Under the pieces are notes generated by a model that saw nothing but the letters and a program-made list of their open reading frames with translations, was not told the origin of the DNA and made no database searches. Shown here one piece after another: positions 12,523-51,872 of a stretch of 64,000 bases of DNA (within the stretch, counting starts at the first letter, position 1; each line of letters opens with the position of its first letter). Both the position numbers and the translations under genes were made by a program. The stretch covers positions 124,001 through 188,000 of IMG/VR virus record IMGVR_UViG_3300042879_006196; one strand, 5' to 3'.

Positions 12523-14901
12523 TTGTCTAACAATATAAATTCAATGCCAACATTAGCCTCTGTAATGACAGATGCAGCAAGAAAAGTAGTTGGAAAAACA
12601 CAATCTGGAAATTCCAGCATGAAAGAATCTGGAAGACAATGGGCAGAGCTTAGATTAGCAAAATCAATTGGTGCTTCAAATAGAGGCTATGGCACAATGC
12701 CATCATTCGAGAAATTGGGACAAATGTCTACAGGGGGTATGCTTAATAATACTACCACACAACCTAATTTTTATAGCCCTTTTCTTACTCCTTCTTCTTT
12801 TCAAATTCCTAATACTAGAAAAGAAATTTATTTATGGTCAAACTGGTGGCGATTAAATGAGCCAAAAGTTGCCGCTGGTATTGATTTTTATAAAAATTTT
12901 CCTTTCAACGGTTGGAAATTAGAATGTAAATCGGGAGTAGTAAAAGATTATTTTGAAAAACTAATTGAAAAATTAAATTTTCAAAAAATGTTGCCATTGA
13001 TTTCTGGTGATTATTATCTCTACGGAGATGCTTTTGTATTCACTGAAATTGATTGCCCCCACTGTGGCGGTGGCATGATTGATTTAAAAACTGGAAATGA
13101 ATGTGAGCACAAAGGGGCTTCTTGGAAATCTATGGTCACATTAAATCCAGATTCTGTTCAAATCACAGCAGGCTTTATTACCACTGAGCCTGTATATGCT
13201 TACTTACCTAACGATCAGGAAGTAAGGATTGTAATGGAAAAAAATCCCAAAGAAGTGTATGATAAAATTCCTGATCAAGTCAAAGCAAAAATAATGGCTA
13301 GACAGCCAATCACTTTAAACCCAATTTCTATTCATCATTTCAAGCATGGCTCAGAATACTGGAATGACTATGGTGTATCATTGGTTAAGCCATTAATGGT
13401 CACCTTGGCTTACAAAGATAAACTTAGACAGGCACAATGGCTTATAGCTGAAAGACATATTATACCCACTAAAATTGTAATGGTTGGTGATGATAATCGC
13501 CCTGCATCTCAAGCAGATTTAGATTCTGTTCAAGAGCAGCTTTCAGCTGTCGCTAACGACCCCAATCTTACGTTAGTTGTTCCTCACGCTTTTAAATATG
13601 AATTTGTTGGCGCATCAAGCCAAATATTGAATGTAGCTGCTGAATTTGAGCAATTAGATCAAGAAATACTTGATGGCTTAATGTTAAACAAAGGACTTTT
13701 AAATGGAGAAGGTCCAAACTATGGTAGTGCTCAAGTTGGCTTACTTGCTATGAACGAAAGGCTTGAAAGCTGGCGAAGAGAAATGCAACACTTTATAGAA
13801 CAAAAAATATTCAAGCCTTGTGCAGAATGGAACGGGTTCTATGCTTCTGGGGAAGCTGGTCAAGAAGAGCTCATTTATCCAAAGATTATTTTTGATCCTT
13901 TAAGACTTAAAGATAACACTGGACAGCTTCAAATGATGGTTACCGCACAGCAAAATGGAGTTGTTTCTGCAGAAACTTTAGTCGAAGAATTTGGATTGAA
14001 TTGGGATCAAGAAGTAGAAAGACTGCGTTTCGAACAAGGAATGAATTTTGTAAATGCTCCTGAAGTTATGGATACAGATATGAACATAGGTTTCGGAGGG
14101 GTGACAGGAGCTGGATTTGGTGGCGGTCCTTTAAATCAACCACTTACACCTGGAGCTGAGGGCGGAGACTTGGGAATGGGCGAGATGCCTCCAGCAGGGG
14201 GAGATATTACTGGTGGCGCTCCAGCTACTGCTCCAGCTCCAGAAGCTCCTATGCCACCTGCTACAGCAGATACTATTTATAAACAATATAAATTTGCTTC
14301 AAATCTTGTAAATGAAATCTGTTATAATAGAACTGCTTTAGCTAAATTGGAAGAAAGAAATTATTTGAGTGAAATAGACAGAGAACTTAATGAAAGATTT
14401 GCAGTAACAGGTAGAAGCTATTTTAAAGAAATACCTGTAGACTTAGAGCCAGCAGAACCTTGGAATTGGAAAGGTGCTGGTGTACCAGAAAACTATGAGG
14501 CTGTAAAATTAGTAAAAGCTTCTAAAGTAAAAAACAAGAGCATTATTGGTTACACAGGTTTAGAGAAAAAACTTTATAAACTTATAATGAGTATGCAACC
14601 ACCTTTGGCATTCTACGCTCAATATGAAGCAGGTCCAGGAAAGGAATATATTTTAGACGGTGCTTTTCCACAAATAAAATTAGCGATTGAAGCTGATGGT
14701 GAGATTTGGCATAATAATGAAAACAAAATAAAATCTGACCAGCACAGAGACACAAACTTATCAAGACAAGGATGGACTGTTTTAAGATTTACAGATAAAG
14801 AAATTGAAAGACAGCCAAAAGATGTTGCTATGGTAATAAAACAAGCAATGCAAAAACTTTTAGGCAGTCTTTCAGGTGAACCTGGTGATCAATTTATTTG
14901 A
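12523..14901 (+). CDS. Portal protein with C-terminal DUF559/Vsr-like endonuclease domain
   Basis: Located between terL and the protease; portal-like segments (EPKVAAGIDFY, YYLYGDAFV, IHHFKH...YGVSLVKP); Pro/Gly/Ala linker; C-terminal LDGAFPQIKLAIEADGEIWH...DQHRDTNLSRQGWTVLRF. Confidence 0.85.
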   Translation: MSNNINSMPTLASVMTDAARKVVGKTQSGNSSMKESGRQWAELRLAKSIGASNRGYGTMPSFEKLGQMSTGGMLNNTTTQPNFYSPFLTPSSFQIPNTRKEIYLWSNWWRLNEPKVAAGIDFYKNFPFNGWKLECKSGVVKDYFEKLIEKLNFQKMLPLISGDYYLYGDAFVFTEIDCPHCGGGMIDLKTGNECEHKGASWKSMVTLNPDSVQITAGFITTEPVYAYLPNDQEVRIVMEKNPKEVYDKIPDQVKAKIMARQPITLNPISIHHFKHGSEYWNDYGVSLVKPLMVTLAYKDKLRQAQWLIAERHIIPTKIVMVGDDNRPASQADLDSVQEQLSAVANDPNLTLVVPHAFKYEFVGASSQILNVAAEFEQLDQEILDGLMLNKGLLNGEGPNYGSAQVGLLAMNERLESWRREMQHFIEQKIFKPCAEWNGFYASGEAGQEELIYPKIIFDPLRLKDNTGQLQMMVTAQQNGVVSAETLVEEFGLNWDQEVERLRFEQGMNFVNAPEVMDTDMNIGFGGVTGAGFGGGPLNQPLTPGAEGGDLGMGEMPPAGGDITGGAPATAPAPEAPMPPATADTIYKQYKFASNLVNEICYNRTALAKLEERNYLSEIDRELNERFAVTGRSYFKEIPVDLEPAEPWNWKGAGVPENYEAVKLVKASKVKNKSIIGYTGLEKKLYKLIMSMQPPLAFYAQYEAGPGKEYILDGAFPQIKLAIEADGEIWHNNENKIKSDQHRDTNLSRQGWTVLRFTDKEIERQPKDVAMVIKQAMQKLLGSLSGEPGDQFI

Positions 14902-45735: not shown

Positions 45736-46158
45736 ATGAATAAAAACATATCTACAAAAATTGTATCAGCTCTTTCGATCTTTGCTCTGGCAACCACTTC
45801 TTTTGCACAATCTACTTTCGGGAGACCTCACATTAATTCAGTGACTGGTAGAGTTAATGTTTTACCAAATGTAAGAGTTATTGATTTTGGAAGACTCATT
45901 TATCAAGGAAGAATGGACGTAAATTCTACTATTGATAGAATCAGATTGGGTAGAAAGCTAAATCATAAAAATGACGGATCATTTTTTTCAAATTTTCAAC
46001 GAAGACTTCCAGCAAGCCCAGACACACAATACTACAGAGAGTTTGTTCATCAAATGAATGGTTTTCCTTTTCCTGGACCACAAAGAGTGGTAATTGGCAA
46101 AAGAGGAGAAGTGTGGTATACAGGTGATCATTACAGTTCTTTTTTCAAAGTAAGATAA
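45736..46158 (+). CDS. Secreted guanyl-specific ribonuclease (barnase/RNase Sa, N1/T1 family)
   Basis: Signal peptide ending SFA/QS; DGSFFSNFQRRLP...YYREF...GPQRVVIG...VWYTGDHYSSF with catalytic E, R and H positions. Confidence 0.88.
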   Translation: MNKNISTKIVSALSIFALATTSFAQSTFGRPHINSVTGRVNVLPNVRVIDFGRLIYQGRMDVNSTIDRIRLGRKLNHKNDGSFFSNFQRRLPASPDTQYYREFVHQMNGFPFPGPQRVVIGKRGEVWYTGDHYSSFFKVR

Positions 46159-46177: not shown

Positions 46178-47197
46178 ATGAGTAAGATTGAATCCGACAA
46201 AGAAAAAAAACAATCTATAAAACCTATTGCTAAAAAAACTGATTTTAATGGTGATAAAATAACACATTCTGAAACCGAAAAAACCAGAGGTGTTGTTGTA
46301 TTTTTATCATCTGACTTAAGTGGTGCACCAGAAGTAATAGATGTTCACGACGGTACAGTAGATTTGGATGCTACCAACTCTCTAAAGAATGACACCGAAT
46401 CAGAAAACTTGGTATTACAAAGCTTATATTTTGATTCAATTTCGCCTGAAATCAATTGTAAACAACAAAAAATGTATCTAAAAGGCTCAGGTTTAAATTC
46501 AAAATTACCTGAGATTAAATGCAAAACAACACTCAGGGAGCGAATAGAAGATAAAAAAAACTCAATGCTGTCTAGAACTATTTTTTTGATAAATTTGTTC
46601 TTTTTGAAGAAAAAGTACACAAATTTCTTTACAAATATTTATTCAGAAATAATACCAGAAGATGTTTTCCAAGCAAAGGTTTTGAATTTGACTAAGTTCA
46701 ATCGCAATAGATTGATGAAAAAGTATGGTATCAGTGAAGATGAGCTCAATTTTATTGCTTTTGCAAGATTCTCGTACCCATTTATAACTAGAGGTGAAAA
46801 AGAATGGAGCAAAATCGAAAAAAATGCTGATGCGTTCATTGCAAGAAAATGGATAACAGAAGACATTAAAGGTAATTTCAAAATAAATGTTAGCAAAGTT
46901 TATACATTCAGGGAAAAAATTATTTTTCCTAATCAATTTAAAGACATTGTTATCAAAAAAGCTTTTAATTGGAAAATCTTAAATAAGATTCTGAGAAAAG
47001 TTGAAAGAAGTGCAAAAACTCAAGTGCACGTTTATACTATTTCTCAAATTAGCAAACTTCCTTTTACCCAATTTGGAAATAGTAATATTGCCACTCATCC
47101 TCCTATTAGTAAAAATGATGAACAAATAAGTAGTTTGATCAAGAAAAAACCAATTGAAGCAATGAGTAGCATTAATAAAAAAAATTTTTTAAAATAA
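46178..47197 (+). CDS. Hypothetical basic protein
   Basis: 339-aa ORF preceded by TGTGTATAAT. Confidence 0.55.
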   Translation: MSKIESDKEKKQSIKPIAKKTDFNGDKITHSETEKTRGVVVFLSSDLSGAPEVIDVHDGTVDLDATNSLKNDTESENLVLQSLYFDSISPEINCKQQKMYLKGSGLNSKLPEIKCKTTLRERIEDKKNSMLSRTIFLINLFFLKKKYTNFFTNIYSEIIPEDVFQAKVLNLTKFNRNRLMKKYGISEDELNFIAFARFSYPFITRGEKEWSKIEKNADAFIARKWITEDIKGNFKINVSKVYTFREKIIFPNQFKDIVIKKAFNWKILNKILRKVERSAKTQVHVYTISQISKLPFTQFGNSNIATHPPISKNDEQISSLIKKKPIEAMSSINKKNFLK

Positions 47198-47264
47198 AAT
47201 AAAATAAGAAACTTTTTTAAAGGAAAAACCGTCTAAGATTGTGTAATATAAAAAAGGAACTAAA

Positions 47265-47318
47265 ATGACAAATTCGCTACTCCATTCATATCCAGCCTAC
47301 GCACCCTCATCGGGGTAG
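47265..47318 (+). CDS. Leader peptide of tRNA array 1 (MTNSLLHSYPAYAPSSG)
   Basis: RBS AAGGA; ATG at 47265 to TAG at 47316-47318; codons match the downstream tRNAs (Pro, Tyr, Leu, His, Ala). Confidence 0.8.
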   Translation: MTNSLLHSYPAYAPSSG

Positions 47319-47387
47319 TGGCTCGTTGCGTATTTGACAAGCTACAGAACCCCGAAGGACTCAAATCTTTCGGGGTTTTTTATTTTT
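47294..47387 (+). promoter_or_regulatory. Transcription attenuator 1 (protector/antiterminator/terminator)
   Basis: 1:2 pairs 47294-47306 with 47312-47323; 2:3 pairs TCGGGGT/GTGGCT (47310-47323) with AGCTAC/ACCCCGA (47340-47355); 3:4 is the terminator 47348-47377 plus U-tract. Confidence 0.8.
47348..47387 (+). terminator. Intrinsic terminator upstream of tRNA array 1
   Basis: AACCCCGAAGGA-CTCAAA-TCTTTCGGGGTT followed by a T-rich tract. Confidence 0.88.
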
Positions 47388-47410
47388 GAACATTGACAAT
47401 TTAATAAAAT

Positions 47411-47489
47411 CTATGCGTTGAGGAGTTTGGCTTACCTCGCGTCCCTTGGGAGGACGAGTACGCAGGTTCAAATCCTGCCGCATAGACCA
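47411..47489 (+). tRNA. tRNA-Pro(TGG)
   Basis: Acceptor CTATGCG/CGCATAG; anticodon arm CGTCC-CTTGGGA-GGACG; encoded CCA. Confidence 0.9.
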
Positions 47490-47493
47490 ATTT

Positions 47494-47578
47494 GGGGGCA
47501 TCGCATAGTGGCAATTGCTGGAGACTGTAAATCTCCCCTCGCGAGAGTTCGTAGGTTCGAGTCCTTCTGCCCCCACCA
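47494..47578 (+). tRNA. tRNA-Tyr(GTA)
   Basis: GGAGA-CTGTAAA-TCTCC; long variable arm; CCA. Confidence 0.93.
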
Positions 47579-47585
47579 AAATTTT

Positions 47586-47665
47586 GCCGAAGTGGTGGAA
47601 TGCATACACGCTAGTCTTAGAAACTAGTGCCTTAGGGCATGTGGGTTCAAATCCCACCTTCGGTA
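47586..47665 (+). tRNA. tRNA-Leu(TAG)
   Basis: CTAGT-CTTAGAA-ACTAG; variable arm; ends TCA rather than CCA. Confidence 0.88.
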
Positions 47666-47671
47666 TCAAAT

Positions 47672-47745
47672 AAGCAAGTAGCTCAATTGGTAGAGCCTTT
47701 TGGTTGTGACCCAGAAGCGTGTGAGTTCAAATCTCACCTTGCTGA
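47672..47745 (+). tRNA. tRNA-His(GTG), atypical or degenerate acceptor end
   Basis: TTTGG-TTGTGAC-CCAGA; canonical D and T arms; 1:72 mismatch, no G-1/C73, no CCA. Confidence 0.7.
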
Positions 47746-47754
47746 CTCAGTTTA

Positions 47755-47831
47755 GGGGCTGAAGCTTATTAGGGAAAGCGTCTGATTTGCAATCAGAAGT
47801 CTTGCGGGTTCGAAACCCGTCAGCTCCACCA
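47755..47831 (+). tRNA. tRNA-Ala(TGC)
   Basis: G3:U70 present; TCTGA-TTTGCAA-TCAGA; CCA. Confidence 0.92.
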
Positions 47832-47832
47832 A

Positions 47833-48150
47833 TTACAAATCATAAAATCTCTTTGGAGTGTAAATATATTTCATAGGCTGAACACCTACCTCGTCAGGTT
47901 GAGTTGTAGGTTCTTCAGCTAATTCGCCTAATACCGCTGGTGGCTCAGGAATAGGGGGATTAATTTGTGCTGGTTCGTTAACAACATTATTTTGTTTACG
48001 ATTATATTCTCTTGCCAATTCTTTACAAGTTTCGCAAGCTCTTTCATCAAATTGCCAGATTGTGTTTCCGCCAGGAAGTTGTTCAATGAAGCATCTACAC
48101 CCTTCATGCACAGGAGGTAAGATTTGTTGTTGTGAATATTTATACCACAC
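47833..48150 (-). CDS. Small protein with a PPxHxxCRC motif (minor-head-protein-like); start probably GTG at 48150
   Basis: (M)WYKYSQQQILPPVHEGCRC...CETC; AGG-N18-TGAA motif upstream; separates the two tRNA arrays. Confidence 0.55.
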   Translation of the reverse strand: MWYKYSQQQILPPVHEGCRCFIEQLPGGNTIWQFDERACETCKELAREYNRKQNNVVNEPAQINPPIPEPPAVLGELAEEPTTQPDEVGVQPMKYIYTPKRFYDL

Positions 48151-48239
48151 AATCTGATTTTCAAGAAAAAAAACAAAAAAACCTAATTTTATAGAACAAA
48201 AAGGAGATTGTGTCGTATAATCATAATAAGGAATTAACA

Positions 48240-48308
48240 ATGAAATTAAATTTGCAGGGCAGTATGGTGGGATGTTTTATTTGGTCAACCCAAGGGGGTA
48301 GTGGCTAG
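48240..48308 (+). CDS. Leader peptide of tRNA array 2 (MKLNLQGSMVGCFIWSTQGGSG)
   Basis: TATAAT at 48215-48220; RBS TAAGGA; ATG at 48240 to TAG at 48306-48308; codons match the downstream tRNAs. Confidence 0.82.
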   Translation: MKLNLQGSMVGCFIWSTQGGSG

Positions 48309-48373
48309 AAACCTGCTGTTAGCAAAAATTTCAACCAAAATCCCTGAAGGCAAAATCTTCAGGGATTTTTTTT
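48282..48373 (+). promoter_or_regulatory. Transcription attenuator 2
   Basis: 1:2 hairpin TGGTCA-ACCC-[AAGG]-GGGT-AG-TGGCTA (48282-48307); G-run/TGG/GAAA (48293-48311) can pair imperfectly with TTTC/CCA/TCCCT (48329-48345); terminator 48337-48373. Confidence 0.72.
48337..48373 (+). terminator. Intrinsic terminator upstream of tRNA array 2
   Basis: AAAATCCCTGAAGG-CAAAA-TCTTCAGGGATTTTTTTT. Confidence 0.9.
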
Positions 48374-48374
48374 A

Positions 48375-48388
48375 TGTTCTTTGACAAT
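48375..48388 (+). promoter_or_regulatory. boxA-like antitermination element (variant GAACATTGACAAT at 47388-47400)
   Basis: TGTTCTTTGACAAT resembles rrn boxA; same relative position before both arrays. Confidence 0.55.
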
Positions 48389-48398
48389 TAAATAGTGA

Positions 48399-48474
48399 GC
48401 GATATTGGTGTTAATGGTTAGCATCACTGCCTTCCAAGCAGAGGGTGCCAGTTCGAATCTGGCATATCGCTCCA
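48399..48474 (+). tRNA. tRNA-Gly(TCC)
   Basis: GCGATAT/ATATCGC; loop CTTCCAA; U73; CCA. Confidence 0.92.
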
Positions 48475-48482
48475 GATTATGT

Positions 48483-48558
48483 GGCTTTCAGGTGTAACTG
48501 GTGTGCACGAAGTGCTGAAAACGCTTAGGACATAGTTCAATTCTATGGGGAGCCACCA
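48483..48558 (+). tRNA. tRNA-Phe(GAA)
   Basis: AAGTG-CTGAAAA-CGCTT; CCA. Confidence 0.88.
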
Positions 48559-48567
48559 CAATTTTGA

Positions 48568-48654
48568 GGAAGGTAATGCTGAATGGTTTTGGCGAATGTT
48601 TGCTAAACATTTCGGGCTGAAAGGTCTCTGGTTCAATTCCAGTGCCTTCCTCCA
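48568..48654 (+). tRNA. tRNA-Ser(GCT)
   Basis: AATGT-TTGCTAA-ACATT; long variable arm; CCA. Confidence 0.88.
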
Positions 48655-48659
48655 TACAA

Positions 48660-48747
48660 GGGGAATTCGCATAGTGGTCTAGTGCGGCTGTCTTGAAAAC
48701 AGTAGGGCTGAAAGGTTCCGTGGGTTCGAATCCTACATTCCCCTCCA
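48660..48747 (+). tRNA. tRNA-Ser(TGA)
   Basis: GCTGT-CTTGAAA-ACAGT; long variable arm; CCA. Confidence 0.92.
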
Positions 48748-48755
48748 AGTTTTGT

Positions 48756-48829
48756 GTTGTCTCTAGCTCAGTTGGTAGAGCATTCCATCGCGAGGAAAGG
48801 CGAAGGTTCAATTCCTTCGGGCAACACCA
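48756..48829 (+). tRNA. Atypical tRNA-like gene with nominal anticodon CGC, identity uncertain
   Basis: Canonical D and T arms and CCA, but a 4-bp anticodon stem TTCC-ATCGCGA-GGAA, a bulged acceptor stem and no G3:U70. Confidence 0.6.
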
Positions 48830-48835
48830 TTTTAT

Positions 48836-48922
48836 TGAGGAATAGTGTAATTGGTAACACGCTAGGTTTTGGCCCTAGAGACAGAAATGCTCGTCCACGT
48901 TCGAATCGTGGTTCCTCAGCCA
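48836..48922 (+). tRNA. tRNA-Gln(TTG) with a long variable arm
   Basis: TGAGGAA/TTCCTCA; G73; CTAGG-TTTTGGC-CCTAG; 16-nt variable region; CCA. Confidence 0.85.
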
Positions 48923-48925
48923 AGC

Positions 48926-49000
48926 ATCCGAGTAGCTCAATGGTAGAGCCCAATCTTGATAAGGTTGAGGTTTTTGGTTCAAGCCCAAACTCGGATACCA
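48926..49000 (+). tRNA. tRNA-Ile(GAT)
   Basis: CAATC-TTGATAA-GGTTG; CCA. Confidence 0.88.
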
Positions 49001-49001
49001 C

Positions 49002-49076
49002 ATCCGCGTAGCTCAACGGTAGAGCAAAATCCTTACAAGATTGAGGTTTTTGGTTCGAATCCAAACGTGGATACCA
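49002..49076 (+). tRNA. tRNA-Val(TAC)
   Basis: AATC-CTTACAA-GATT; CCA. Confidence 0.88.
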
Positions 49077-49081
49077 ATTTC

Positions 49082-49155
49082 GGCAAATTAGCTCAATGGC
49101 AGAGCGGAGGTATCATAAGCCTTTGATAAAAGTTCGATTCTTTTATTTGCCCCCA
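49082..49155 (+). tRNA. tRNA with CAT anticodon (elongator Met or Ile2)
   Basis: GAGGT-ATCATAA-GCCTT; paired 1:72 and no initiator triple G-C; CCA. Confidence 0.8.
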
Positions 49156-49158
49156 TAA

Positions 49159-49232
49159 GCACGATTAGCTAAATGGTAAAGCAAGGGTCTGCAAAACCTT
49201 TATCGCTGGTTCGATTCCAGCATTGTGCTCCA
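49159..49232 (+). tRNA. tRNA-Cys(GCA)
   Basis: AGGGT-CTGCAAA-ACCTT; U73; CCA. Confidence 0.92.
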
Positions 49233-49235
49233 TAC

Positions 49236-49310
49236 ACCGCTGAGAGTAGGTTGTTTCTAAAGAGTCTCCAAAACTTTTTTACCTGGGTTCAAATCCCAGC
49301 GGCGGTGCCA
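49236..49310 (+). tRNA. tRNA-Trp(CCA), atypical D arm
   Basis: AGAGT-CTCCAAA-ACTTT; G73; CCA. Confidence 0.82.
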
Positions 49311-49313
49311 ATC

Positions 49314-49622
49314 TCACGACACAATCTTAATAATATGCGGTTCTGTTTCTGAGATATTGAATATACCATCACCCAATTGATATTTTTTACCTAAATCATC
49401 AATGAAATCCTGAAATTGCGTTTCAGCATTTTCAATCACTTCTTGGTTTTGTGCAAATTCTGCCTGTAGGGATTGCATTTGCTTTTCAGTTTTTCTCATC
49501 ATATCAAATAAATCTGATCTTTTTCCTTTCAGATTAAGAATACCAGCTCTCATTTGGGTATAGTTGTTGAATTCTTCTTTGGAAAGTGCTTTTTCAGATT
49601 GTGTGTCGCTTTTGAACTTCAT
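49314..49622 (-). CDS. Hypothetical coiled-coil protein
   Basis: 102-aa ORF downstream of the endolysin. Confidence 0.55.
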   Translation of the reverse strand: MKFKSDTQSEKALSKEEFNNYTQMRAGILNLKGKRSDLFDMMRKTEKQMQSLQAEFAQNQEVIENAETQFQDFIDDLGKKYQLGDGIFNISETEPHIIKIVS

Positions 49623-49640
49623 AATATTATTTTACAAGAT

Positions 49641-50489
49641 TTATCTTGTTCTTATTAAAACAAAAGTGGCTCCAGTTTTATCACAAACATCTCTCAAAAA
49701 TATCCAAGCGCTGCCATTTTCATCTATCTCGGCTACAGGCACAGAATAACCTTTCAAGCCATTCATCCACACAATGTTTTTGCCCATTTTTGTCAAAGCA
49801 TAATTTTTGGGTTGTAATTTATTAATAAATTCTCTAGCAGGAACAATAGTTCTACTATTTACCACTCTTGTTTTACCATAAATGAAAACATTATCTCCCA
49901 ATGTTATTTCAAAAACAGGATTAGTCCAAGGCGCGGCACCTTCCCCACTAAAAATTAAATATTGTTTATTTACTGCATCTACAAATTTTGTTTTGTCTAC
50001 AAGTTTACCAGGGCATGTTTTATTTGTCAAAGGGTCATCTCTATGGAATTTAAGTGTAGGTGGTTGCACCTTTAGATAATCGCAAAGAAACCCACACAAT
50101 TCTTGAGTGATTTCAAAAATTTCTTTTGCTCTATGTGAAGTGAAATCTGTAACAGTGTCGTAGTCACCTAGCATTTCTATACCCCAAGCATTAGCATTAT
50201 AGCTTTTGGCATGTACGCCAGGTTTGTTTAATGCTTGAAAAAGAATAATTCCTTTATCATCTACAAAAAAATGTGGTGCACCGTTCCAATTCATAACATG
50301 CTCATAATAATATTTCAAATTGATGAGATGTTGATCTGTGAAGCCATTTGGTCTTTGTGAAAGATTAGGTGAGGCTGTGTGATGTACTACAACAAATTGC
50401 GGTTTAAATGAAGTGAAATTCAAAGTTGCTAAATAAGTTTTTAGTTCTGCGATCGTTACTCTTTTGCCAACATAAGGAATAGTGCCCAT
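49641..50489 (-). CDS. N-acetylmuramoyl-L-alanine amidase (Amidase_2/PGRP-like endolysin)
   Basis: VVVHHTA...HFFVD...GVHAKSYN...GIEMLG...FHRD...KTCPG; C-terminal domain resembling copper amine oxidase N-terminal repeats. Confidence 0.88.
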   Translation of the reverse strand: MGTIPYVGKRVTIAELKTYLATLNFTSFKPQFVVVHHTASPNLSQRPNGFTDQHLINLKYYYEHVMNWNGAPHFFVDDKGIILFQALNKPGVHAKSYNANAWGIEMLGDYDTVTDFTSHRAKEIFEITQELCGFLCDYLKVQPPTLKFHRDDPLTNKTCPGKLVDKTKFVDAVNKQYLIFSGEGAAPWTNPVFEITLGDNVFIYGKTRVVNSRTIVPAREFINKLQPKNYALTKMGKNIVWMNGLKGYSVPVAEIDENGSAWIFLRDVCDKTGATFVLIRTR

Positions 50490-50544: not shown

Positions 50545-51090
50545 ATGACTTTGAATTGCAATATTCCACATTTTGAATGTTTTGTTAAAAAAGAATTTCT
50601 TACCAACTTTACACAATCTGATGAGTTGATAAAAGCCAAAGCTTTTGCAGTGTCGAGCACAAGAGGTCAAGTGTTACAGTTTCATGTTTTGACAGAGCAT
50701 GGAGCAATGTTTTCTAAACTTCCAGTGCATGCTTTAGTTCTTAAAAAAGATTATGAAAAAATGGAATTAAATCAGCTTGTCACTTATGATACTTTTAGTT
50801 TTCATTTGTCAAACATTACTTATGATTATTTAAAATATTTGACATGCACATACTTTGCTGGTGATAAACGCGAAAAATATGGGGCTACATATTTTACAAC
50901 AGTTGATTTTTATGATTCCGAGTATGCAGATCACCCTGGTGTCACTAAATGTTGTCATATTTTGTTTTTAGATAATGGCAATATTGCGGCAGCACCAAAC
51001 AATAGAATCCTATGGAACGACACAGGATTAAAGTCAGATGTAACGAAAATTGATTATAAGCCTTTAAATAAAATCTTTACAGTGGAATGA
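50545..51090 (+). CDS. Conserved hypothetical phage protein
   Basis: LNCNIPHFECFV...FHVLTEHGAMFSKLPVHAL...LDNGNIAAAPNNRILW. Confidence 0.6.
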   Translation: MTLNCNIPHFECFVKKEFLTNFTQSDELIKAKAFAVSSTRGQVLQFHVLTEHGAMFSKLPVHALVLKKDYEKMELNQLVTYDTFSFHLSNITYDYLKYLTCTYFAGDKREKYGATYFTTVDFYDSEYADHPGVTKCCHILFLDNGNIAAAPNNRILWNDTGLKSDVTKIDYKPLNKIFTVE

Positions 51091-51872
51091 AAATATTTTT
51101 TGATCATATTCTTTTTCAGCAAACTAATTACAATTTTAATCATACACTTGTATCTGCAATTTTTGAAGAAAATGAATATAATTATGCATTAGAAAATGGA
51201 TGGTTTCCAGATAATTTTTGGATAAATTCATCTACAAGTCATTCAATAAGATGTGAAAAATTGGGCGAATTTGTTTGGTCTCCAATAAGATCTTCTAGAA
51301 TTAAAGTGGAGGATTTTGTACTTGACAAAAAAGATAGAAGATTACTTAAAAATAATATTGATGTAGAAAAGCAAATTGTTTCGCAAATAGATACTGTAGA
51401 AGTGTTTGAAGTTTATAAAAAATATATTTGCGCAAAAGGATTCGATGATTTTAAGGATTCATTAGAAGATTTCAAACATAGTTTTTGCCGAGAAGATTTT
51501 CATTTTTTACTTTACAAACAAAACACAATCTTAATAGGCTTTTGTATTGTGCAACCATTTGGAAATAATCTAGTGTCTTATCAATTTTGTTGGGATTATG
51601 AAAATCCAAAATTAAGTTTGGGAAAATTTTCACAAATTCAAGAAATAGAATATGCTAAATCACTCAACATGAATTATGTTTACATAGGATGCATTGCTGA
51701 AAAAGAAGGAATGTATAAAAGTAATTTTTCTGGATTTGAATATTTTAATGGAAGAGAATGGAGAAAGAAAGATAACTTAATCGAAAAATGGCTTTTGAAT
51801 GATTCAGATTGTGTGAGTATTGACAGATTGTGTGAGTTAGAAAAGGAATACATCAAAGACTACCAGGTTTAA
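51087..51872 (+). CDS. Aminoacyl-tRNA-protein transferase-like (ATE1/Bpt family GNAT fold)
   Basis: ALENGWF...RSSRI...YQFCWDYENPKLSLGKFSQIQEIEYAK...YVYIG...MYKSNF. Confidence 0.75.
   Translation: MKIFFDHILFQQTNYNFNHTLVSAIFEENEYNYALENGWFPDNFWINSSTSHSIRCEKLGEFVWSPIRSSRIKVEDFVLDKKDRRLLKNNIDVEKQIVSQIDTVEVFEVYKKYICAKGFDDFKDSLEDFKHSFCREDFHFLLYKQNTILIGFCIVQPFGNNLVSYQFCWDYENPKLSLGKFSQIQEIEYAKSLNMNYVYIGCIAEKEGMYKSNFSGFEYFNGREWRKKDNLIEKWLLNDSDCVSIDRLCELEKEYIKDYQV

What the first reader, a model, noticed from the sequence alone, without database searches (positions are those of the whole stretch)
47250..49310. Multiplexed codon-checklist attenuators controlling phage tRNA arrays
SEEN: both tRNA arrays share one architecture: RBS, short leader ORF, intrinsic terminator, boxA-like site, tRNAs. 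Leader 1 (47265-47318, MTNS-LLHSYPAYAP-SSG) precedes tRNAs Pro, Tyr, Leu, His and Ala. Nine of its residues 5-14 are those amino acids and all five are covered, including exact cognates CTA, CCA, GCA and TAC. Leader 2 (48240-48308, MKLNL-QGSMVGCFIWSTQGGSG) precedes Gly, Phe, Ser(GCT), Ser(TGA), Gln, Ile, Val, Met, Cys and Trp. Sixteen of its residues 6-22 belong to this set, all nine amino acids are covered, and both Ser boxes appear (AGT and TCA). The match is array-specific: leader 2 has no P/Y/H/A or CTN codon, and leader 1 has no F/Q/I/V/C/W. KNOWN: ribosome-mediated attenuation (trp, his, thr, ilv, pheST leaders) reads out charged-tRNA shortage, and host anticodon nucleases (PrrC, RloC, PARIS AriB, retron Eco7 PtuAB) destroy tRNAs that phage tRNAs can replace. 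INFERENCE: the phage senses loss of any tRNA on the list by ribosome stalling and only then transcribes the replacement array, making an inducible anti-defence or anti-starvation OR gate. I am not aware of this being described for phage tRNA arrays.
Basis: partly seen in the sequence, partly recalled or inferred. Interest (0 to 1): 0.97.

Follow-up and report, generated by a model that had tools for sequence, protein, structure and literature searches.

The report
Leader-peptide attenuators before phage tRNA arrays
In this 347-kb lake-water phage, each of the two large tRNA gene arrays sits behind a tiny translated leader and a transcription terminator, and each leader's codons spell out almost exactly the amino acids of the tRNAs that follow, which looks like a classical attenuator re-used to make tRNAs on demand, something I could not find described before.

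Summary
Both arrays share one module: a tRNA-type promoter, SD, short ORF (47265-47318; 48240-48308), strong intrinsic terminator, boxA-like site, then tRNAs 12 nt later. It occurs nowhere else in the genome. The five small tRNA clusters have a promoter directly upstream.

The leader/array match is not chance. Codons 6-15 of leader 2 (QGSMVGCFIW) are the only one of 694,726 six-frame 10-codon windows lying wholly in the array's nine-amino-acid set and covering all nine. Permuting amino-acid labels gives p of about 1e-5 to 5e-5.

About a dozen metagenomic relatives keep SD, ATG, frame (indels in threes) and stop, with synonymous changes at the matched codons. One divergent relative keeps all nine amino acids in shuffled order.

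Folding predicts in every variant an antiterminator whose 5' strand is the ORF's 3' end. It is free if a ribosome stalls at the matched codons and masked at the stop codon.

Caveats:
- No transcript data; the read-laying run failed.
- Structural covariation is weak.
- Leader/array co-variation is partial: Ile yes, Val mixed. Mobile elements truncated three arrays without any leader change.
- One CGC-anticodon tRNA-like gene is unmatched.
- The anti-defence trigger is untested.

Verdict: a probable new variant of ribosome-mediated attenuation.

The parts
47236..47249 (+). Promoter of module 1: AGATTGTGT motif, then a -10-like TAATAT
   Evidence: The same motif-plus-(-10) arrangement sits directly before the Asp-Asn-Thr tRNA cluster.
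47255..47258 (+). Shine-Dalgarno AGGA of leader 1
   Evidence: Conserved in all relatives.
47265..47318 (+). Leader ORF 1, 17 codons. The matched codons are at positions 5-14 (L L H S Y P A Y A P).
   Evidence: There are five peptide variants in relatives, with synonymous changes at L5, P10, A11, A13 and S15.
47305..47327 (+). Antiterminator 5' strand of module 1. It covers the ORF's 3' end, the stop codon and the shared 12-mer at 47312-47323.
47336..47358 (+). Antiterminator 3' strand of module 1. It overlaps the terminator's 5' arm.
47346..47389 (+). Intrinsic terminator 1: 14-bp stem at 47346-47379, then a U-tract
47388..47400 (+). boxA-like site 1 (GAACATTGACAAT)
   Evidence: Conserved in relatives.
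47411..47831 (+). tRNA array 1: Pro(TGG), Tyr(GTA), Leu(TAG), His(GTG), Ala(TGC)
48205..48221 (+). Promoter of module 2: AGATTGTGT, then CG, then a -10 TATAAT
   Evidence: The same TCGTATAAT sits directly before the tRNA-Lys and Met-Glu clusters.
48229..48232 (+). Shine-Dalgarno AGGA of leader 2
48240..48308 (+). Leader ORF 2, 22 codons. Codons 6-15 (Q G S M V G C F I W) cover all nine amino acids of the array.
48282..48291 (+). Region 1 of module 2 (TGGTCAACCC). It pairs with region 2 as an anti-antiterminator hairpin.
   Evidence: Invariant in relatives.
48294..48307 (+). Region 2 of module 2, which includes the shared 12-mer at 48295-48306. It pairs either with region 1 or with the terminator's 5' arm (ATCCCT, 48340-48345).
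48337..48377 (+). Intrinsic terminator 2: stem at 48337-48369, then a U-tract
   Evidence: Compensatory changes in L001.
48375..48388 (+). boxA-like site 2 (TGTTCTTTGACAAT)
   Evidence: Invariant core in relatives.
48399..49310 (+). tRNA array 2: Gly, Phe, Ser(GCT, weak call), Ser(TGA), a tRNA-like gene with anticodon CGC, Gln, Ile, Val, Met, Cys, Trp

Best explanation
Each tRNA array is gated by a classical ribosome-mediated (trp/his-type) transcription attenuator.

Proposed sequence of events:
1. Transcription starts at a tRNA-type promoter, and a ribosome loads on the leader.
2. If the ribosome reads through to the stop codon, it covers the G-rich 3' end of the ORF. That stretch is the 5' strand of the antiterminator. 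The terminator hairpin then forms 27-29 nt downstream and RNA polymerase stops before the tRNAs.
3. If the ribosome is held up at any codon in the sensing zone, the ORF's 3' end stays free. The zone is about codons 5-12 of leader 1 and codons 6-15 of leader 2. The free end pairs with the terminator's 5' arm, so polymerase reads on through the boxA-like site into the array.
4. The codons in that zone are those decoded by the tRNAs of that particular array. The circuit is therefore a negative feedback: a shortage of a usable aminoacyl-tRNA on the list switches on synthesis of the phage's own copy, and sufficiency switches it off.

Status of each step:
- Shown by sequence: the parts, their conservation, the codon/array match and the alternative pairings.
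- Inferred: translation, stalling, termination, read-through, and the physiological trigger.
For: Anatomy:
- Two paralogous modules have the same order and spacing.
- The module occurs only at the two arrays in the 347-kb genome.
- The other five tRNA clusters carry the same promoter type directly upstream, with no leader.
- No sigma-70-like promoter is found between terminator and tRNA, and the first tRNA starts 12 nt after the boxA-like hexamer.

Codon match:
- Genome-wide window test and label permutation, p about 1e-5 to 5e-5.
- The match also holds at codon level. Leader 1 uses only CTN Leu codons, although 62% of phage Leu codons are TTR. Leader 2 uses both Ser boxes, and the array has both Ser tRNAs.

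Signs of translation across about a dozen relatives whose flanking proteins are only 42-65% identical:
- SD, ATG and stop are kept, including a TAG-to-TAA change.
- All length changes are multiples of three.
- Variable sites by codon position are 5, 6 and 10.
- L5, P10, A11, A13 and S15 change only synonymously.

Composition is conserved, not sequence:
- I and M swap places in the L007 type of leader 2.
- L and S swap in leader 1 of L001.
- In the divergent L015, leader 2 is re-ordered yet still holds all nine amino acids. Only 50-178 of 244,733 stop-free 20-codon windows do so.

Switch:
- In all 12 leader variants folded, the transcript made before the terminator's 3' arm folds into an antiterminator.
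- That antiterminator disappears once the ribosome's A site passes codon 13 (leader 1) or codons 14-16 (leader 2).
- RNAalifold recovers it for leader 1 with 95.9% of cells paired.
- ORF ends pair with terminator 5' arms at a mean of -12.3 kcal/mol, against -5.6 +/- 2.5 for shuffled ORF ends.
- The leader 2 region gives a weak hit to Rfam His_leader (26.9 bits, E = 0.17).

Co-variation:
- The L001/L024 clade lacks tRNA-Ile and has no Ile codon.
- L022 lacks tRNA-Val and has no Val codon.
- L001 has an extra tRNA-Leu(GAG) and an extra CTC codon.

Controls:
- None of 18 tRNA arrays in four unrelated phages has a terminator plus short ORF upstream.
Against: - There is no transcript, Term-seq or ribosome data.
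- Covariation is weak. Only 2 compensatory pairs were found, both in the inner hairpin, and 33 of 500 shuffles reach the score.
- ORF ends pair with other leaders' terminator arms as well as with their own (-12.25 against -12.1 kcal/mol, p = 0.38).
- The leader/array match is imperfect:
  - S8 in leader 1 and T17 in leader 2 lie outside the sets.
  - The CGC-anticodon tRNA-like gene has no codon in leader 2.
  - Val is missing from the leaders of L001, L010 and L011 although tRNA-Val is present.
- Arrays truncated by an HNH ORF (L009-11), an endonuclease-like ORF (L012) or an IS607-type element (L015) keep unchanged leaders.
- L026 has no short leader. An ORF of about 88 aa runs into the terminator.
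- In L015 and L026 the boxA-like hexamer plus 17 nt plus TAAAGT scores as promoter-like.
- One regulatory codon per amino acid gives hyperbolic, low-sensitivity control in the Elf-Ehrenberg model (PMC1183508).
- For leader 1, the antiterminator is thermodynamically preferred even without a ribosome. The untranslated default may therefore be read-through rather than super-attenuation.
- The host is unknown, so transcription-translation coupling is assumed.
Confidence: 0.65

Rival explanations
1. General translation-status sensor. The leader-terminator module is a real ribosome-dependent attenuator, but it reads overall translation capacity (initiation plus elongation) rather than individual tRNAs. 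Any slow-down or shut-off of translation opens both arrays.
For: There are only one to three copies of each codon, which gives low per-codon sensitivity. For leader 1 the antiterminator forms by default when no ribosome is present. Leaders are unchanged when arrays lose tRNAs.
Against: It does not explain why the two leaders use disjoint amino-acid sets that match their own arrays (p about 1e-5). It does not explain why all nine amino acids, including the rare C, W and M, are retained through re-ordering in L015. It does not explain the joint loss of the Ile tRNA and the Ile codon.
Confidence: 0.15
2. One reading: an inducible counter-defence. The leaders detect host tRNAs destroyed by anticodon nucleases or other tRNA-cleaving immunity, and only then switch on the replacement tRNAs, acting as an OR gate.
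For: The anatomy is the same as for the best explanation. Single-codon sensing suits all-or-none loss of a tRNA species better than mild starvation. Phage tRNAs are known to counter tRNA-targeting defences (PMC10264068 and PMC11555353, abstracts seen).
Against: Nothing in the sequence points to nucleases as the trigger. The host and its defences are unknown. The phage's other tRNAs, including Lys, a classic anticodon-nuclease target (my own knowledge), have no leader. Relatives do without parts of the arrays.
Confidence: 0.2
3. Separate small gene. The short ORF plus terminator is an independent micro-gene encoding a peptide or small RNA. The tRNAs are then transcribed from their own promoter, with TTGACA as the -35, or by constitutive leak through the terminator. 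On this view the codon match is incidental.
For: The boxA-like core is identical to a -35 hexamer. In L015 and L026 it has a -10-like partner 17 nt downstream. L026 keeps the terminator and the boxA-like site without a short leader.
Against: In the window the tRNA starts 12 nt after the hexamer, so a transcription start would fall inside the tRNA, and the scan finds no promoter there. Peptide order is not conserved although composition is, which argues against a functional peptide. The codon match is far beyond chance. The ORF's 3' end is complementary to the terminator arm in all variants.
Confidence: 0.06
4. Chance. An untranslated leader holds a terminator that merely insulates the arrays from upstream transcription, and the ORFs are accidental.
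For: Short ORFs are common in AT-rich DNA. No expression data exist.
Against: SD, ATG, frame and stop are conserved across relatives with 42-65% identical flanking proteins. Indels come in multiples of three. Synonymous changes occur at the matched codons. Permutation and genome-wide tests reject chance.
Confidence: 0.04

Closest known systems
Ribosome-mediated transcription attenuators of amino-acid biosynthesis operons (trpL, hisL, leuL, thrL, ilvL/ivbL, pheL)
   Same: A short SD-led leader ORF carries regulatory codons. An intrinsic terminator lies before the controlled genes. An antiterminator competes for the terminator's 5' arm and is masked by a ribosome at the leader's stop codon. Module 2 also has a 1:2 hairpin. 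Multivalent leaders are already known, for example ilv (Leu/Val/Ile) and thr (Thr/Ile).
   Different: The controlled genes are tRNAs, not enzymes, so the product itself decodes the leader. Five and nine different amino acids are listed, mostly once each, instead of runs of one or two. The element is phage-encoded. A boxA-like site follows the terminator. There is no significant Rfam match (His_leader 26.9 bits against a threshold of 49).
pheST and similar leader-peptide attenuators of aminoacyl-tRNA synthetase genes; T-box riboswitches
   Same: They control translation-supply genes according to the charging state of the cognate tRNA.
   Different: pheST controls a synthetase and lists one amino acid. 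T-boxes bind uncharged tRNA directly through a specifier codon and the T-box sequence, with no ORF. No T-box was found here.
boxA/Nus antitermination leaders of rRNA operons and lambda nut sites
   Same: Site 2 matches 11 of the 13 positions of the E. coli rrn boxA and 12 of 13 of the B. subtilis form, both recalled from memory. It lies at the start of a long untranslated RNA operon.
   Different: NusB/NusE binding is untested. Site 1 is a weaker match. No boxB or boxC was identified. The core is also a perfect -35 hexamer.
tRNA clusters of T4, T5-like, Bacillus and jumbo coliphages
   Same: Arrays of phage tRNAs interspersed with homing-endonuclease genes.
   Different: None of the 18 arrays sampled in four such phages has a terminator plus short ORF directly upstream. 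I found no paper describing leader-peptide control of them.

Membership tests
Ribosome-mediated (leader-peptide) transcription attenuator | Short leader ORF with a ribosome-binding site and start codon, conserved as an ORF | tested here: met
   AGGA lies 7 nt before the ATG. The ORF, frame and stop are kept in all relatives but L026 (no short leader), and indels come in multiples of three.
Ribosome-mediated (leader-peptide) transcription attenuator | Regulatory codons cognate to what the controlled genes supply | tested here: met
   Leader 1 lists P, Y, L, H and A. Leader 2 lists G, F, S, Q, I, V, M, C and W. Both lists match the downstream arrays. Exceptions are the CGC-anticodon tRNA-like gene, and Val in some relatives.
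Ribosome-mediated (leader-peptide) transcription attenuator | Intrinsic terminator between the leader and the controlled genes | tested here: met
   14-bp GC-rich stems plus U-tracts, with compensatory changes among relatives.
Ribosome-mediated (leader-peptide) transcription attenuator | An antiterminator mutually exclusive with the terminator, blocked by a ribosome at the leader's stop codon and free when the ribosome stalls at the regulatory codons | tested here: inconclusive
   It is predicted in all 12 variants folded by ribosome-masked folding and by RNAalifold. Covariation support is weak.
Ribosome-mediated (leader-peptide) transcription attenuator | Read-through rises when the cognate charged tRNA is limiting and depends on leader translation | not testable with these tools
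   This needs reporter, Term-seq or in vitro coupled assays. The RNA read-laying run failed.
Rfam His_leader (RF00514) or another curated leader family | Score at or above the family's gathering threshold | tested here: not met
   26.9 bits against a threshold of 49, E = 0.17, for 48221-48375. Nothing was found for module 1.
T-box riboswitch | Specifier loop and T-box sequence detectable by the Rfam model | tested here: not met
   No T-box match at E <= 1 in 46500-50000.
boxA (NusB/NusE) antitermination site | Sequence close to the boxA consensus at the 5' end of an untranslated RNA operon | tested here: inconclusive
   The sites at 48375-48388 and 47388-47400 resemble boxA, with the consensus recalled from memory. 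They are conserved in relatives. The core also equals a -35 hexamer, and in L015 and L026 it has a -10-like partner.
boxA (NusB/NusE) antitermination site | Binding of NusB/NusE and protection from Rho | not testable with these tools
   Biochemical.

The most novel reading that the evidence does not exclude
A phage carries tRNA-species-level sensors. Each leader is a checklist of codons, and the loss of any one listed host tRNA stalls the ribosome and switches on the array that holds the phage's replacement. The loss could come from anticodon nucleases, from other tRNA-cleaving immunity, or from the phage's own host shut-off. That would make this the first inducible, self-limiting tRNA counter-measure, and the first attenuator whose product is the molecule it senses.
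Probability: 0.2. Interest if true: 0.95.

Novelty: new variant of a known kind. Interest (0 to 1): 0.85.

Why it matters
Phage tRNAs are usually treated as constitutive add-ons, serving codon compensation or replacing tRNAs cut by host defences. How their expression is controlled is largely unknown.

If these modules work as their anatomy suggests:
- They show that tRNA genes themselves can be put under leader-peptide attenuation.
- They show that one leader can multiplex up to nine amino acids.
- They show that a virus can measure the usable tRNA pool of its host and top it up on demand.

This gives a directly testable handle on the long-standing question of why phages carry tRNAs. It would also provide a compact natural sensor of codon-specific translation speed that could be re-used in synthetic biology.

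Tried and rejected
1. RNA evidence. The look-up of sequencing runs found two RNA-seq runs holding about 0.3 of the region's words.

2. Close relatives in public phage records. There are none. Only tRNA-level hits at 78% identity or less were found. The upstream 339-aa ORF found nothing in IMG/VR. IMG/VR holds one relative contig.

3. Co-evolution of the ORF's 3' end with its own terminator arm. A duplex-energy matrix showed no own-versus-cross difference, so I dropped it as evidence.

4. Typing the tRNAs of the divergent L015. The aim was to test its 35-codon leader 1, which has three Arg codons, against its array. ARAGORN and Rfam disagree, and several genes carry insertions. I saw one candidate Arg(UCG) but regard it as unreliable.

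5. A promoter between terminator and tRNA in the window. Rejected (the spacing leaves no room).

6. The terminator as the end of an upstream gene. Rejected for module 2, because the upstream ORF is on the other strand.

7. Other copies of the module before non-tRNA genes. None were found.

8. Literature. Five full-text searches and one paper check found no description of leader-peptide control of tRNA genes or phage tRNA arrays. The library lacks most subscription journals, so absence is not proof.

9. Host identification and a taxonomic check of the boxA form were not attempted.

Full report
WHAT IS THERE

The window is bases 124001-188000 of a single 347,392-bp virus record. It has 33.6% G+C and carries 23 ARAGORN tRNAs plus a tmRNA. 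It is widespread in lake-water metagenomes.

In 47236-49310 there are two paralogous modules on the + strand. Each consists of the following parts, in order:
- a -10 element preceded by the motif AGATTGTGT;
- an AGGA Shine-Dalgarno 7 nt before an ATG;
- a short ORF (17 codons at 47265-47318; 22 codons at 48240-48308);
- a 14-bp GC-rich hairpin with a U-tract, 27-29 nt after the stop codon (47346-47379; 48337-48369);
- a boxA-like sequence (47388-47400; 48375-48388);
- the first tRNA, 12 nt later.

The two leader regions align at 75% mean column identity. They share a 12-mer, GGGGTAGTGGCT, which is read in different frames in the two ORFs, so that stretch is conserved as RNA and not as peptide.

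The module occurs nowhere else in the genome. The five small tRNA clusters (Met; Asp-Asn-Thr; Lys; Arg; Met-Glu) have the same kind of -10 directly before the tRNA, with no ORF or terminator between. Examples are TCGTATAAT, or AGATTGTGT followed by ATAAT.

No sigma-70-like promoter is found between terminator and tRNA.

THE MATCH BETWEEN LEADERS AND ARRAYS

Leader 1 (MTNSLLHSYPAYAPSSG) precedes Pro, Tyr, Leu(TAG), His and Ala(TGC).

Leader 2 (MKLNLQGSMVGCFIWSTQGGSG) precedes Gly, Phe, Ser(GCT), Ser(TGA), a tRNA-like gene with anticodon CGC, Gln, Ile, Val, Met, Cys and Trp.

Two corrections apply:
- The CGC gene (48756-48829) was omitted. It has no Ala codon in leader 2, and by eye it lacks the G3:U70 pair that the array-1 tRNA-Ala has.
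- Ser(GCT) is only a sub-threshold call.

The last five residues of leader 2 and the last three of leader 1 are encoded by the structure-constrained 3' end, so they should not be counted as evidence. Without them the picture is cleaner: codons 6-15 of leader 2 are QGSMVGCFIW, ten codons holding all nine amino acids of the array.

Statistics:
- Among 694,726 ten-codon windows in six frames of the genome, this is the only one lying wholly in the set and covering all nine.
- Leader 1 (LLHSYPAYAP) is one of eight windows with at least 9/10 in its set and all five covered.
- Holding the peptides fixed and drawing random disjoint sets of 5 and 9 amino acids, 71 of 2,000,000 draws reach the observed score, 108 reach full coverage, and 28 reach both.

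At codon level:
- Leader 1 uses only CTN for Leu (CTA and CTC, which make up 7% and 4% of phage Leu codons).
- Leader 2's two Leu codons are TTA and TTG, for which the phage has no tRNA.
- Leader 2 uses both Ser boxes.

RELATIVES

A DNA pattern found one IMG/VR contig, L001, of 166 kb. A small conserved ORF on the opposite strand between the arrays then served as an anchor. It recovered nine JGI metagenome loci and, through the protein database, further ENA, JGI and Logan contigs. Flanking proteins are 42-65% identical to the window's.

Leader 1 variants:
- window and L006: MTNSLLHSYPAYAPSSG
- L007: MTNSLRHLYPAYAPSSG
- L009-12 and L020: MTNSLRHPYPAYAPSSG
- L001: MINTLSHLYPALAPSSG
- L014: MTNNLRHTYPALANSSG

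L5, H7, Y9, P10, A11 and A13 are invariant as amino acids. Their third positions vary: CTA/CTT/CTC, CCA/CCG, GCC/GCA/GCT and GCA/GCC/GCG. Variable sites by codon position number 5, 6 and 10.

Leader 2 variants:
- The window type.
- The same with S21N.
- The L007, L010, L011, L022 and L025 type, MKLNLQGSIGCFMWSTQGGSG. One codon (Val) is deleted, I and M have swapped places, and the stop is TAA.
- L001 and L023: MRNSQFSQGCFMWSTLQGNG.
- L024: MRNSQSFSQGCSMWSASGGLG.
- The divergent L015: M(M)KSMWNQNTGSICFTSQGVG.

All length differences are multiples of three, and SD, ATG and stop are kept.

In L015 the order of residues is largely different, yet all nine amino acids are present. Only 178 of 244,733 stop-free 20-codon windows of the genome cover all nine, and only 50 of them also have at least 14/20 in the set. 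Selection therefore appears to act on which codons are present, not on a peptide sequence.

CO-VARIATION OF LEADER AND ARRAY

The evidence is mixed.

For:
- The L001/L024 clade has neither tRNA-Ile nor an Ile codon.
- L022 has neither tRNA-Val nor a Val codon.
- L001 has an additional tRNA-Leu(GAG) and a third Leu codon, CTC.

Against or neutral:
- L001, L024, L010 and L011 have tRNA-Val but no Val codon.
- L007, L018 and L019 show no tRNA-His in array 1, yet L007 keeps the His codon.
- An HNH ORF has replaced Leu-His-Ala in L009-11, leaving the 3' stub of tRNA-Ala.
- An endonuclease-like ORF has replaced the distal half of array 2 in L012.
- An IS607-type resolvase plus TnpB has done the same in L015.
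- In all three of these lineages the leader is unchanged.
- L026, the most divergent relative, has no short leader. An ORF of about 88 aa runs into the terminator.
- L015 has a 35-codon leader 1 with three Arg codons and a candidate Arg(UCG) tRNA, but I could not type its unusual tRNAs reliably.

THE SWITCH

The full leaders fold better than shuffles (z = -2.8 and -3.4) into an upstream hairpin plus the terminator.

When the transcript is cut just before the terminator's 3' arm, the minimum-energy fold of leader 1 is an antiterminator of 19 pairs. In it, 47305-47327 pairs with 47336-47358 and sequesters 10 of the 14 bases of the terminator's 5' arm.

I then masked everything up to 12 nt beyond the A-site codon to mimic a ribosome:
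- In leader 1 the antiterminator stays intact for A-site codons 1-11, weakens at codon 12 and is gone from codon 13 to the stop.
- In leader 2 the corresponding helix (GGGGGT with ATCCCT, plus inner stems) is present for about codons 7-15 and lost from codon 16.
- The same behaviour is found in all twelve leader variants folded (the window's two among them), including L014, L015 and L024, whose terminator arms differ.

The stop codon lies 27-29 nt before the terminator stem in the window and most relatives. So a terminating ribosome covers the 5' strand of the antiterminator but cannot reach the terminator.

Leader 2 also has a conserved hairpin between TGGTCAACCC (codons 15-17) and the 12-mer. 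This is the classical 1:2 element, and it explains why the non-listed Thr17 is invariant.

RNAalifold recovers the leader-1 antiterminator, with 95.9% of cells paired. The statistics are weak, however: there are two compensatory pairs, both in the inner hairpin, and 33 of 500 shuffles reach the score.

ORF ends pair with terminator 5' arms far better than shuffled ORF ends do (-12.3 against -5.6 +/- 2.5 kcal/mol). They pair no better with their own arm than with other leaders' arms (p = 0.38). The alternative structure is therefore consistently available, but it is not proven by covariation.

INTERPRETATION

The parts, their order and their spacing are those of a trp/his-type attenuator, and the position of the matched codions coincides with the zone where a stalled ribosome would leave the antiterminator free.

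The most economical reading is demand-driven feedback. Slow decoding of any listed codon lets polymerase through into the array that encodes the matching tRNAs. Once decoding is fast, the ribosome reaches the stop and transcription ends at the terminator.

Shown: the anatomy, the conservation and the statistics. Inferred: translation, termination, stalling and the trigger.

Published modelling indicates that a single regulatory codon gives hyperbolic, low-sensitivity control, and that many codons are needed for hypersensitivity (PMC1183508). Each item on the list would therefore respond mainly to severe depletion of its tRNA, or the leader would integrate many small delays. That fits a response to loss of tRNA species or to a global slow-down better than fine amino-acid homeostasis, but it does not identify the cause.

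THE boxA-LIKE SITE

Site 2 (TGTTCTTTGACAA) differs from the E. coli rrn boxA at two of thirteen positions and from the B. subtilis form at one. Both consensus sequences are from memory. The site is as conserved as the tRNAs.

Placed after the attenuator and before a long untranslated transcript, a Nus-dependent anti-Rho function is plausible. However, its core is also a perfect -35 hexamer. In L015 and L026, where about 90 nt of extra structured RNA separates it from the first tRNA, a -10-like TAAAGT lies 17 nt downstream. In the window no such partner exists.

COMPARISON AND NOVELTY

Multivalent leader peptides (ilv, thr) and attenuators of translation-supply genes (pheST, T-boxes) are known. 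I found no report of leader-peptide attenuation of tRNA genes, in phages or in cells, in five full-text searches and one paper check.

Eighteen tRNA arrays in four unrelated phages show no terminator plus short ORF upstream. The four phages were a Bacillus herellevirus, a 349-kb coliphage, a T5-like phage and a 735-kb metagenomic phage.

I therefore class this as a new variant of a known mechanism. It is confined, so far, to one lineage of freshwater jumbo phages.

Noticed in passing
whole genome; in the window e.g. 47236-47244, 48057-48065, 48205-48213: The 9-mer ACACAATCT/AGATTGTGT occurs 336 times in 347 kb, against about 2.6 expected. It mostly appears as ACACAATCT-G-TATTAAT or within TTTCCAGGTTTAACACAATCTGATTATAAT, so it is probably a phage-specific promoter element. 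It sits in the opposite orientation right before the -10 of both leader promoters and of the Asp-Asn-Thr tRNA promoter.
   Followed up: partly
window 48756-48829: A tRNA-like gene with anticodon CGC (TGC in L007 and L022). Its acceptor stem lacks the G3:U70 alanine identity pair, which the array-1 tRNA-Ala (47755-47831) has. Its identity and function are unclear. It is the one array member with no codon in leader 2.
   Followed up: partly
window 48836-48922; L001, L013, L014, L024: tRNA-Gln carries a 16-nt variable region. Its homologues in relatives, and tRNA-Gly in L001 and L024, carry 12-24-nt insertions in or next to the anticodon arm (ARAGORN calls them with 'introns'). Several L015 tRNAs have about 20-nt insertions.
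   Followed up: no
L001:7416-7506(-), L007:1488-1578(-), L014:8625-8730(-), L015:6492-6592(-), also L026: A conserved structured RNA of about 85 nt lies between the boxA-like site and tRNA-Pro in relatives. It has six compensatory base pairs, matches no Rfam family, and is absent from the window.
   Followed up: partly
L009-L011, L012, L014, L015 (array regions): Homing-endonuclease-like ORFs (HNH and others) and an IS607-type resolvase plus TnpB sit inside the tRNA arrays of relatives and have deleted blocks of tRNAs. In L009-11 the 3' stub of tRNA-Ala remains.
   Followed up: partly
window 51087-51872 (+) and 45736-46158 (+): An ORF with the C-terminal domain of arginyl-tRNA-protein transferase (ATE_C, E = 8e-14) lies 1.8 kb downstream of array 2. 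A barnase-type ribonuclease ORF (PF00545, E = 8.5e-9) lies 1.1 kb upstream of leader 1. Both are syntenic in relatives.
   Followed up: no
genome 321534-321917 (outside the window): The phage encodes a tmRNA with tag peptide AKKNRRNGFGSAQAGFAMVA. Its tRNAs cover all 20 amino acids, with U34 anticodons for the four-codon boxes.
   Followed up: no
L015 (rc 1620-1727) and L026: In the most divergent clade, leader 1 is either expanded to 35 codons (MTNSQRSPFNKDTASLNLRGLYLGYRPVLAPYSGT) or replaced by an ORF of about 88 aa that runs into the terminator.
   Followed up: partly
genome ~13900-13967 (outside the window): Directly upstream of the first tRNA-Met there is a tRNA-like 3' end (GGTTCAAGTCC...CCGACCA) that ARAGORN does not call. 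It may be another atypical tRNA.
   Followed up: no
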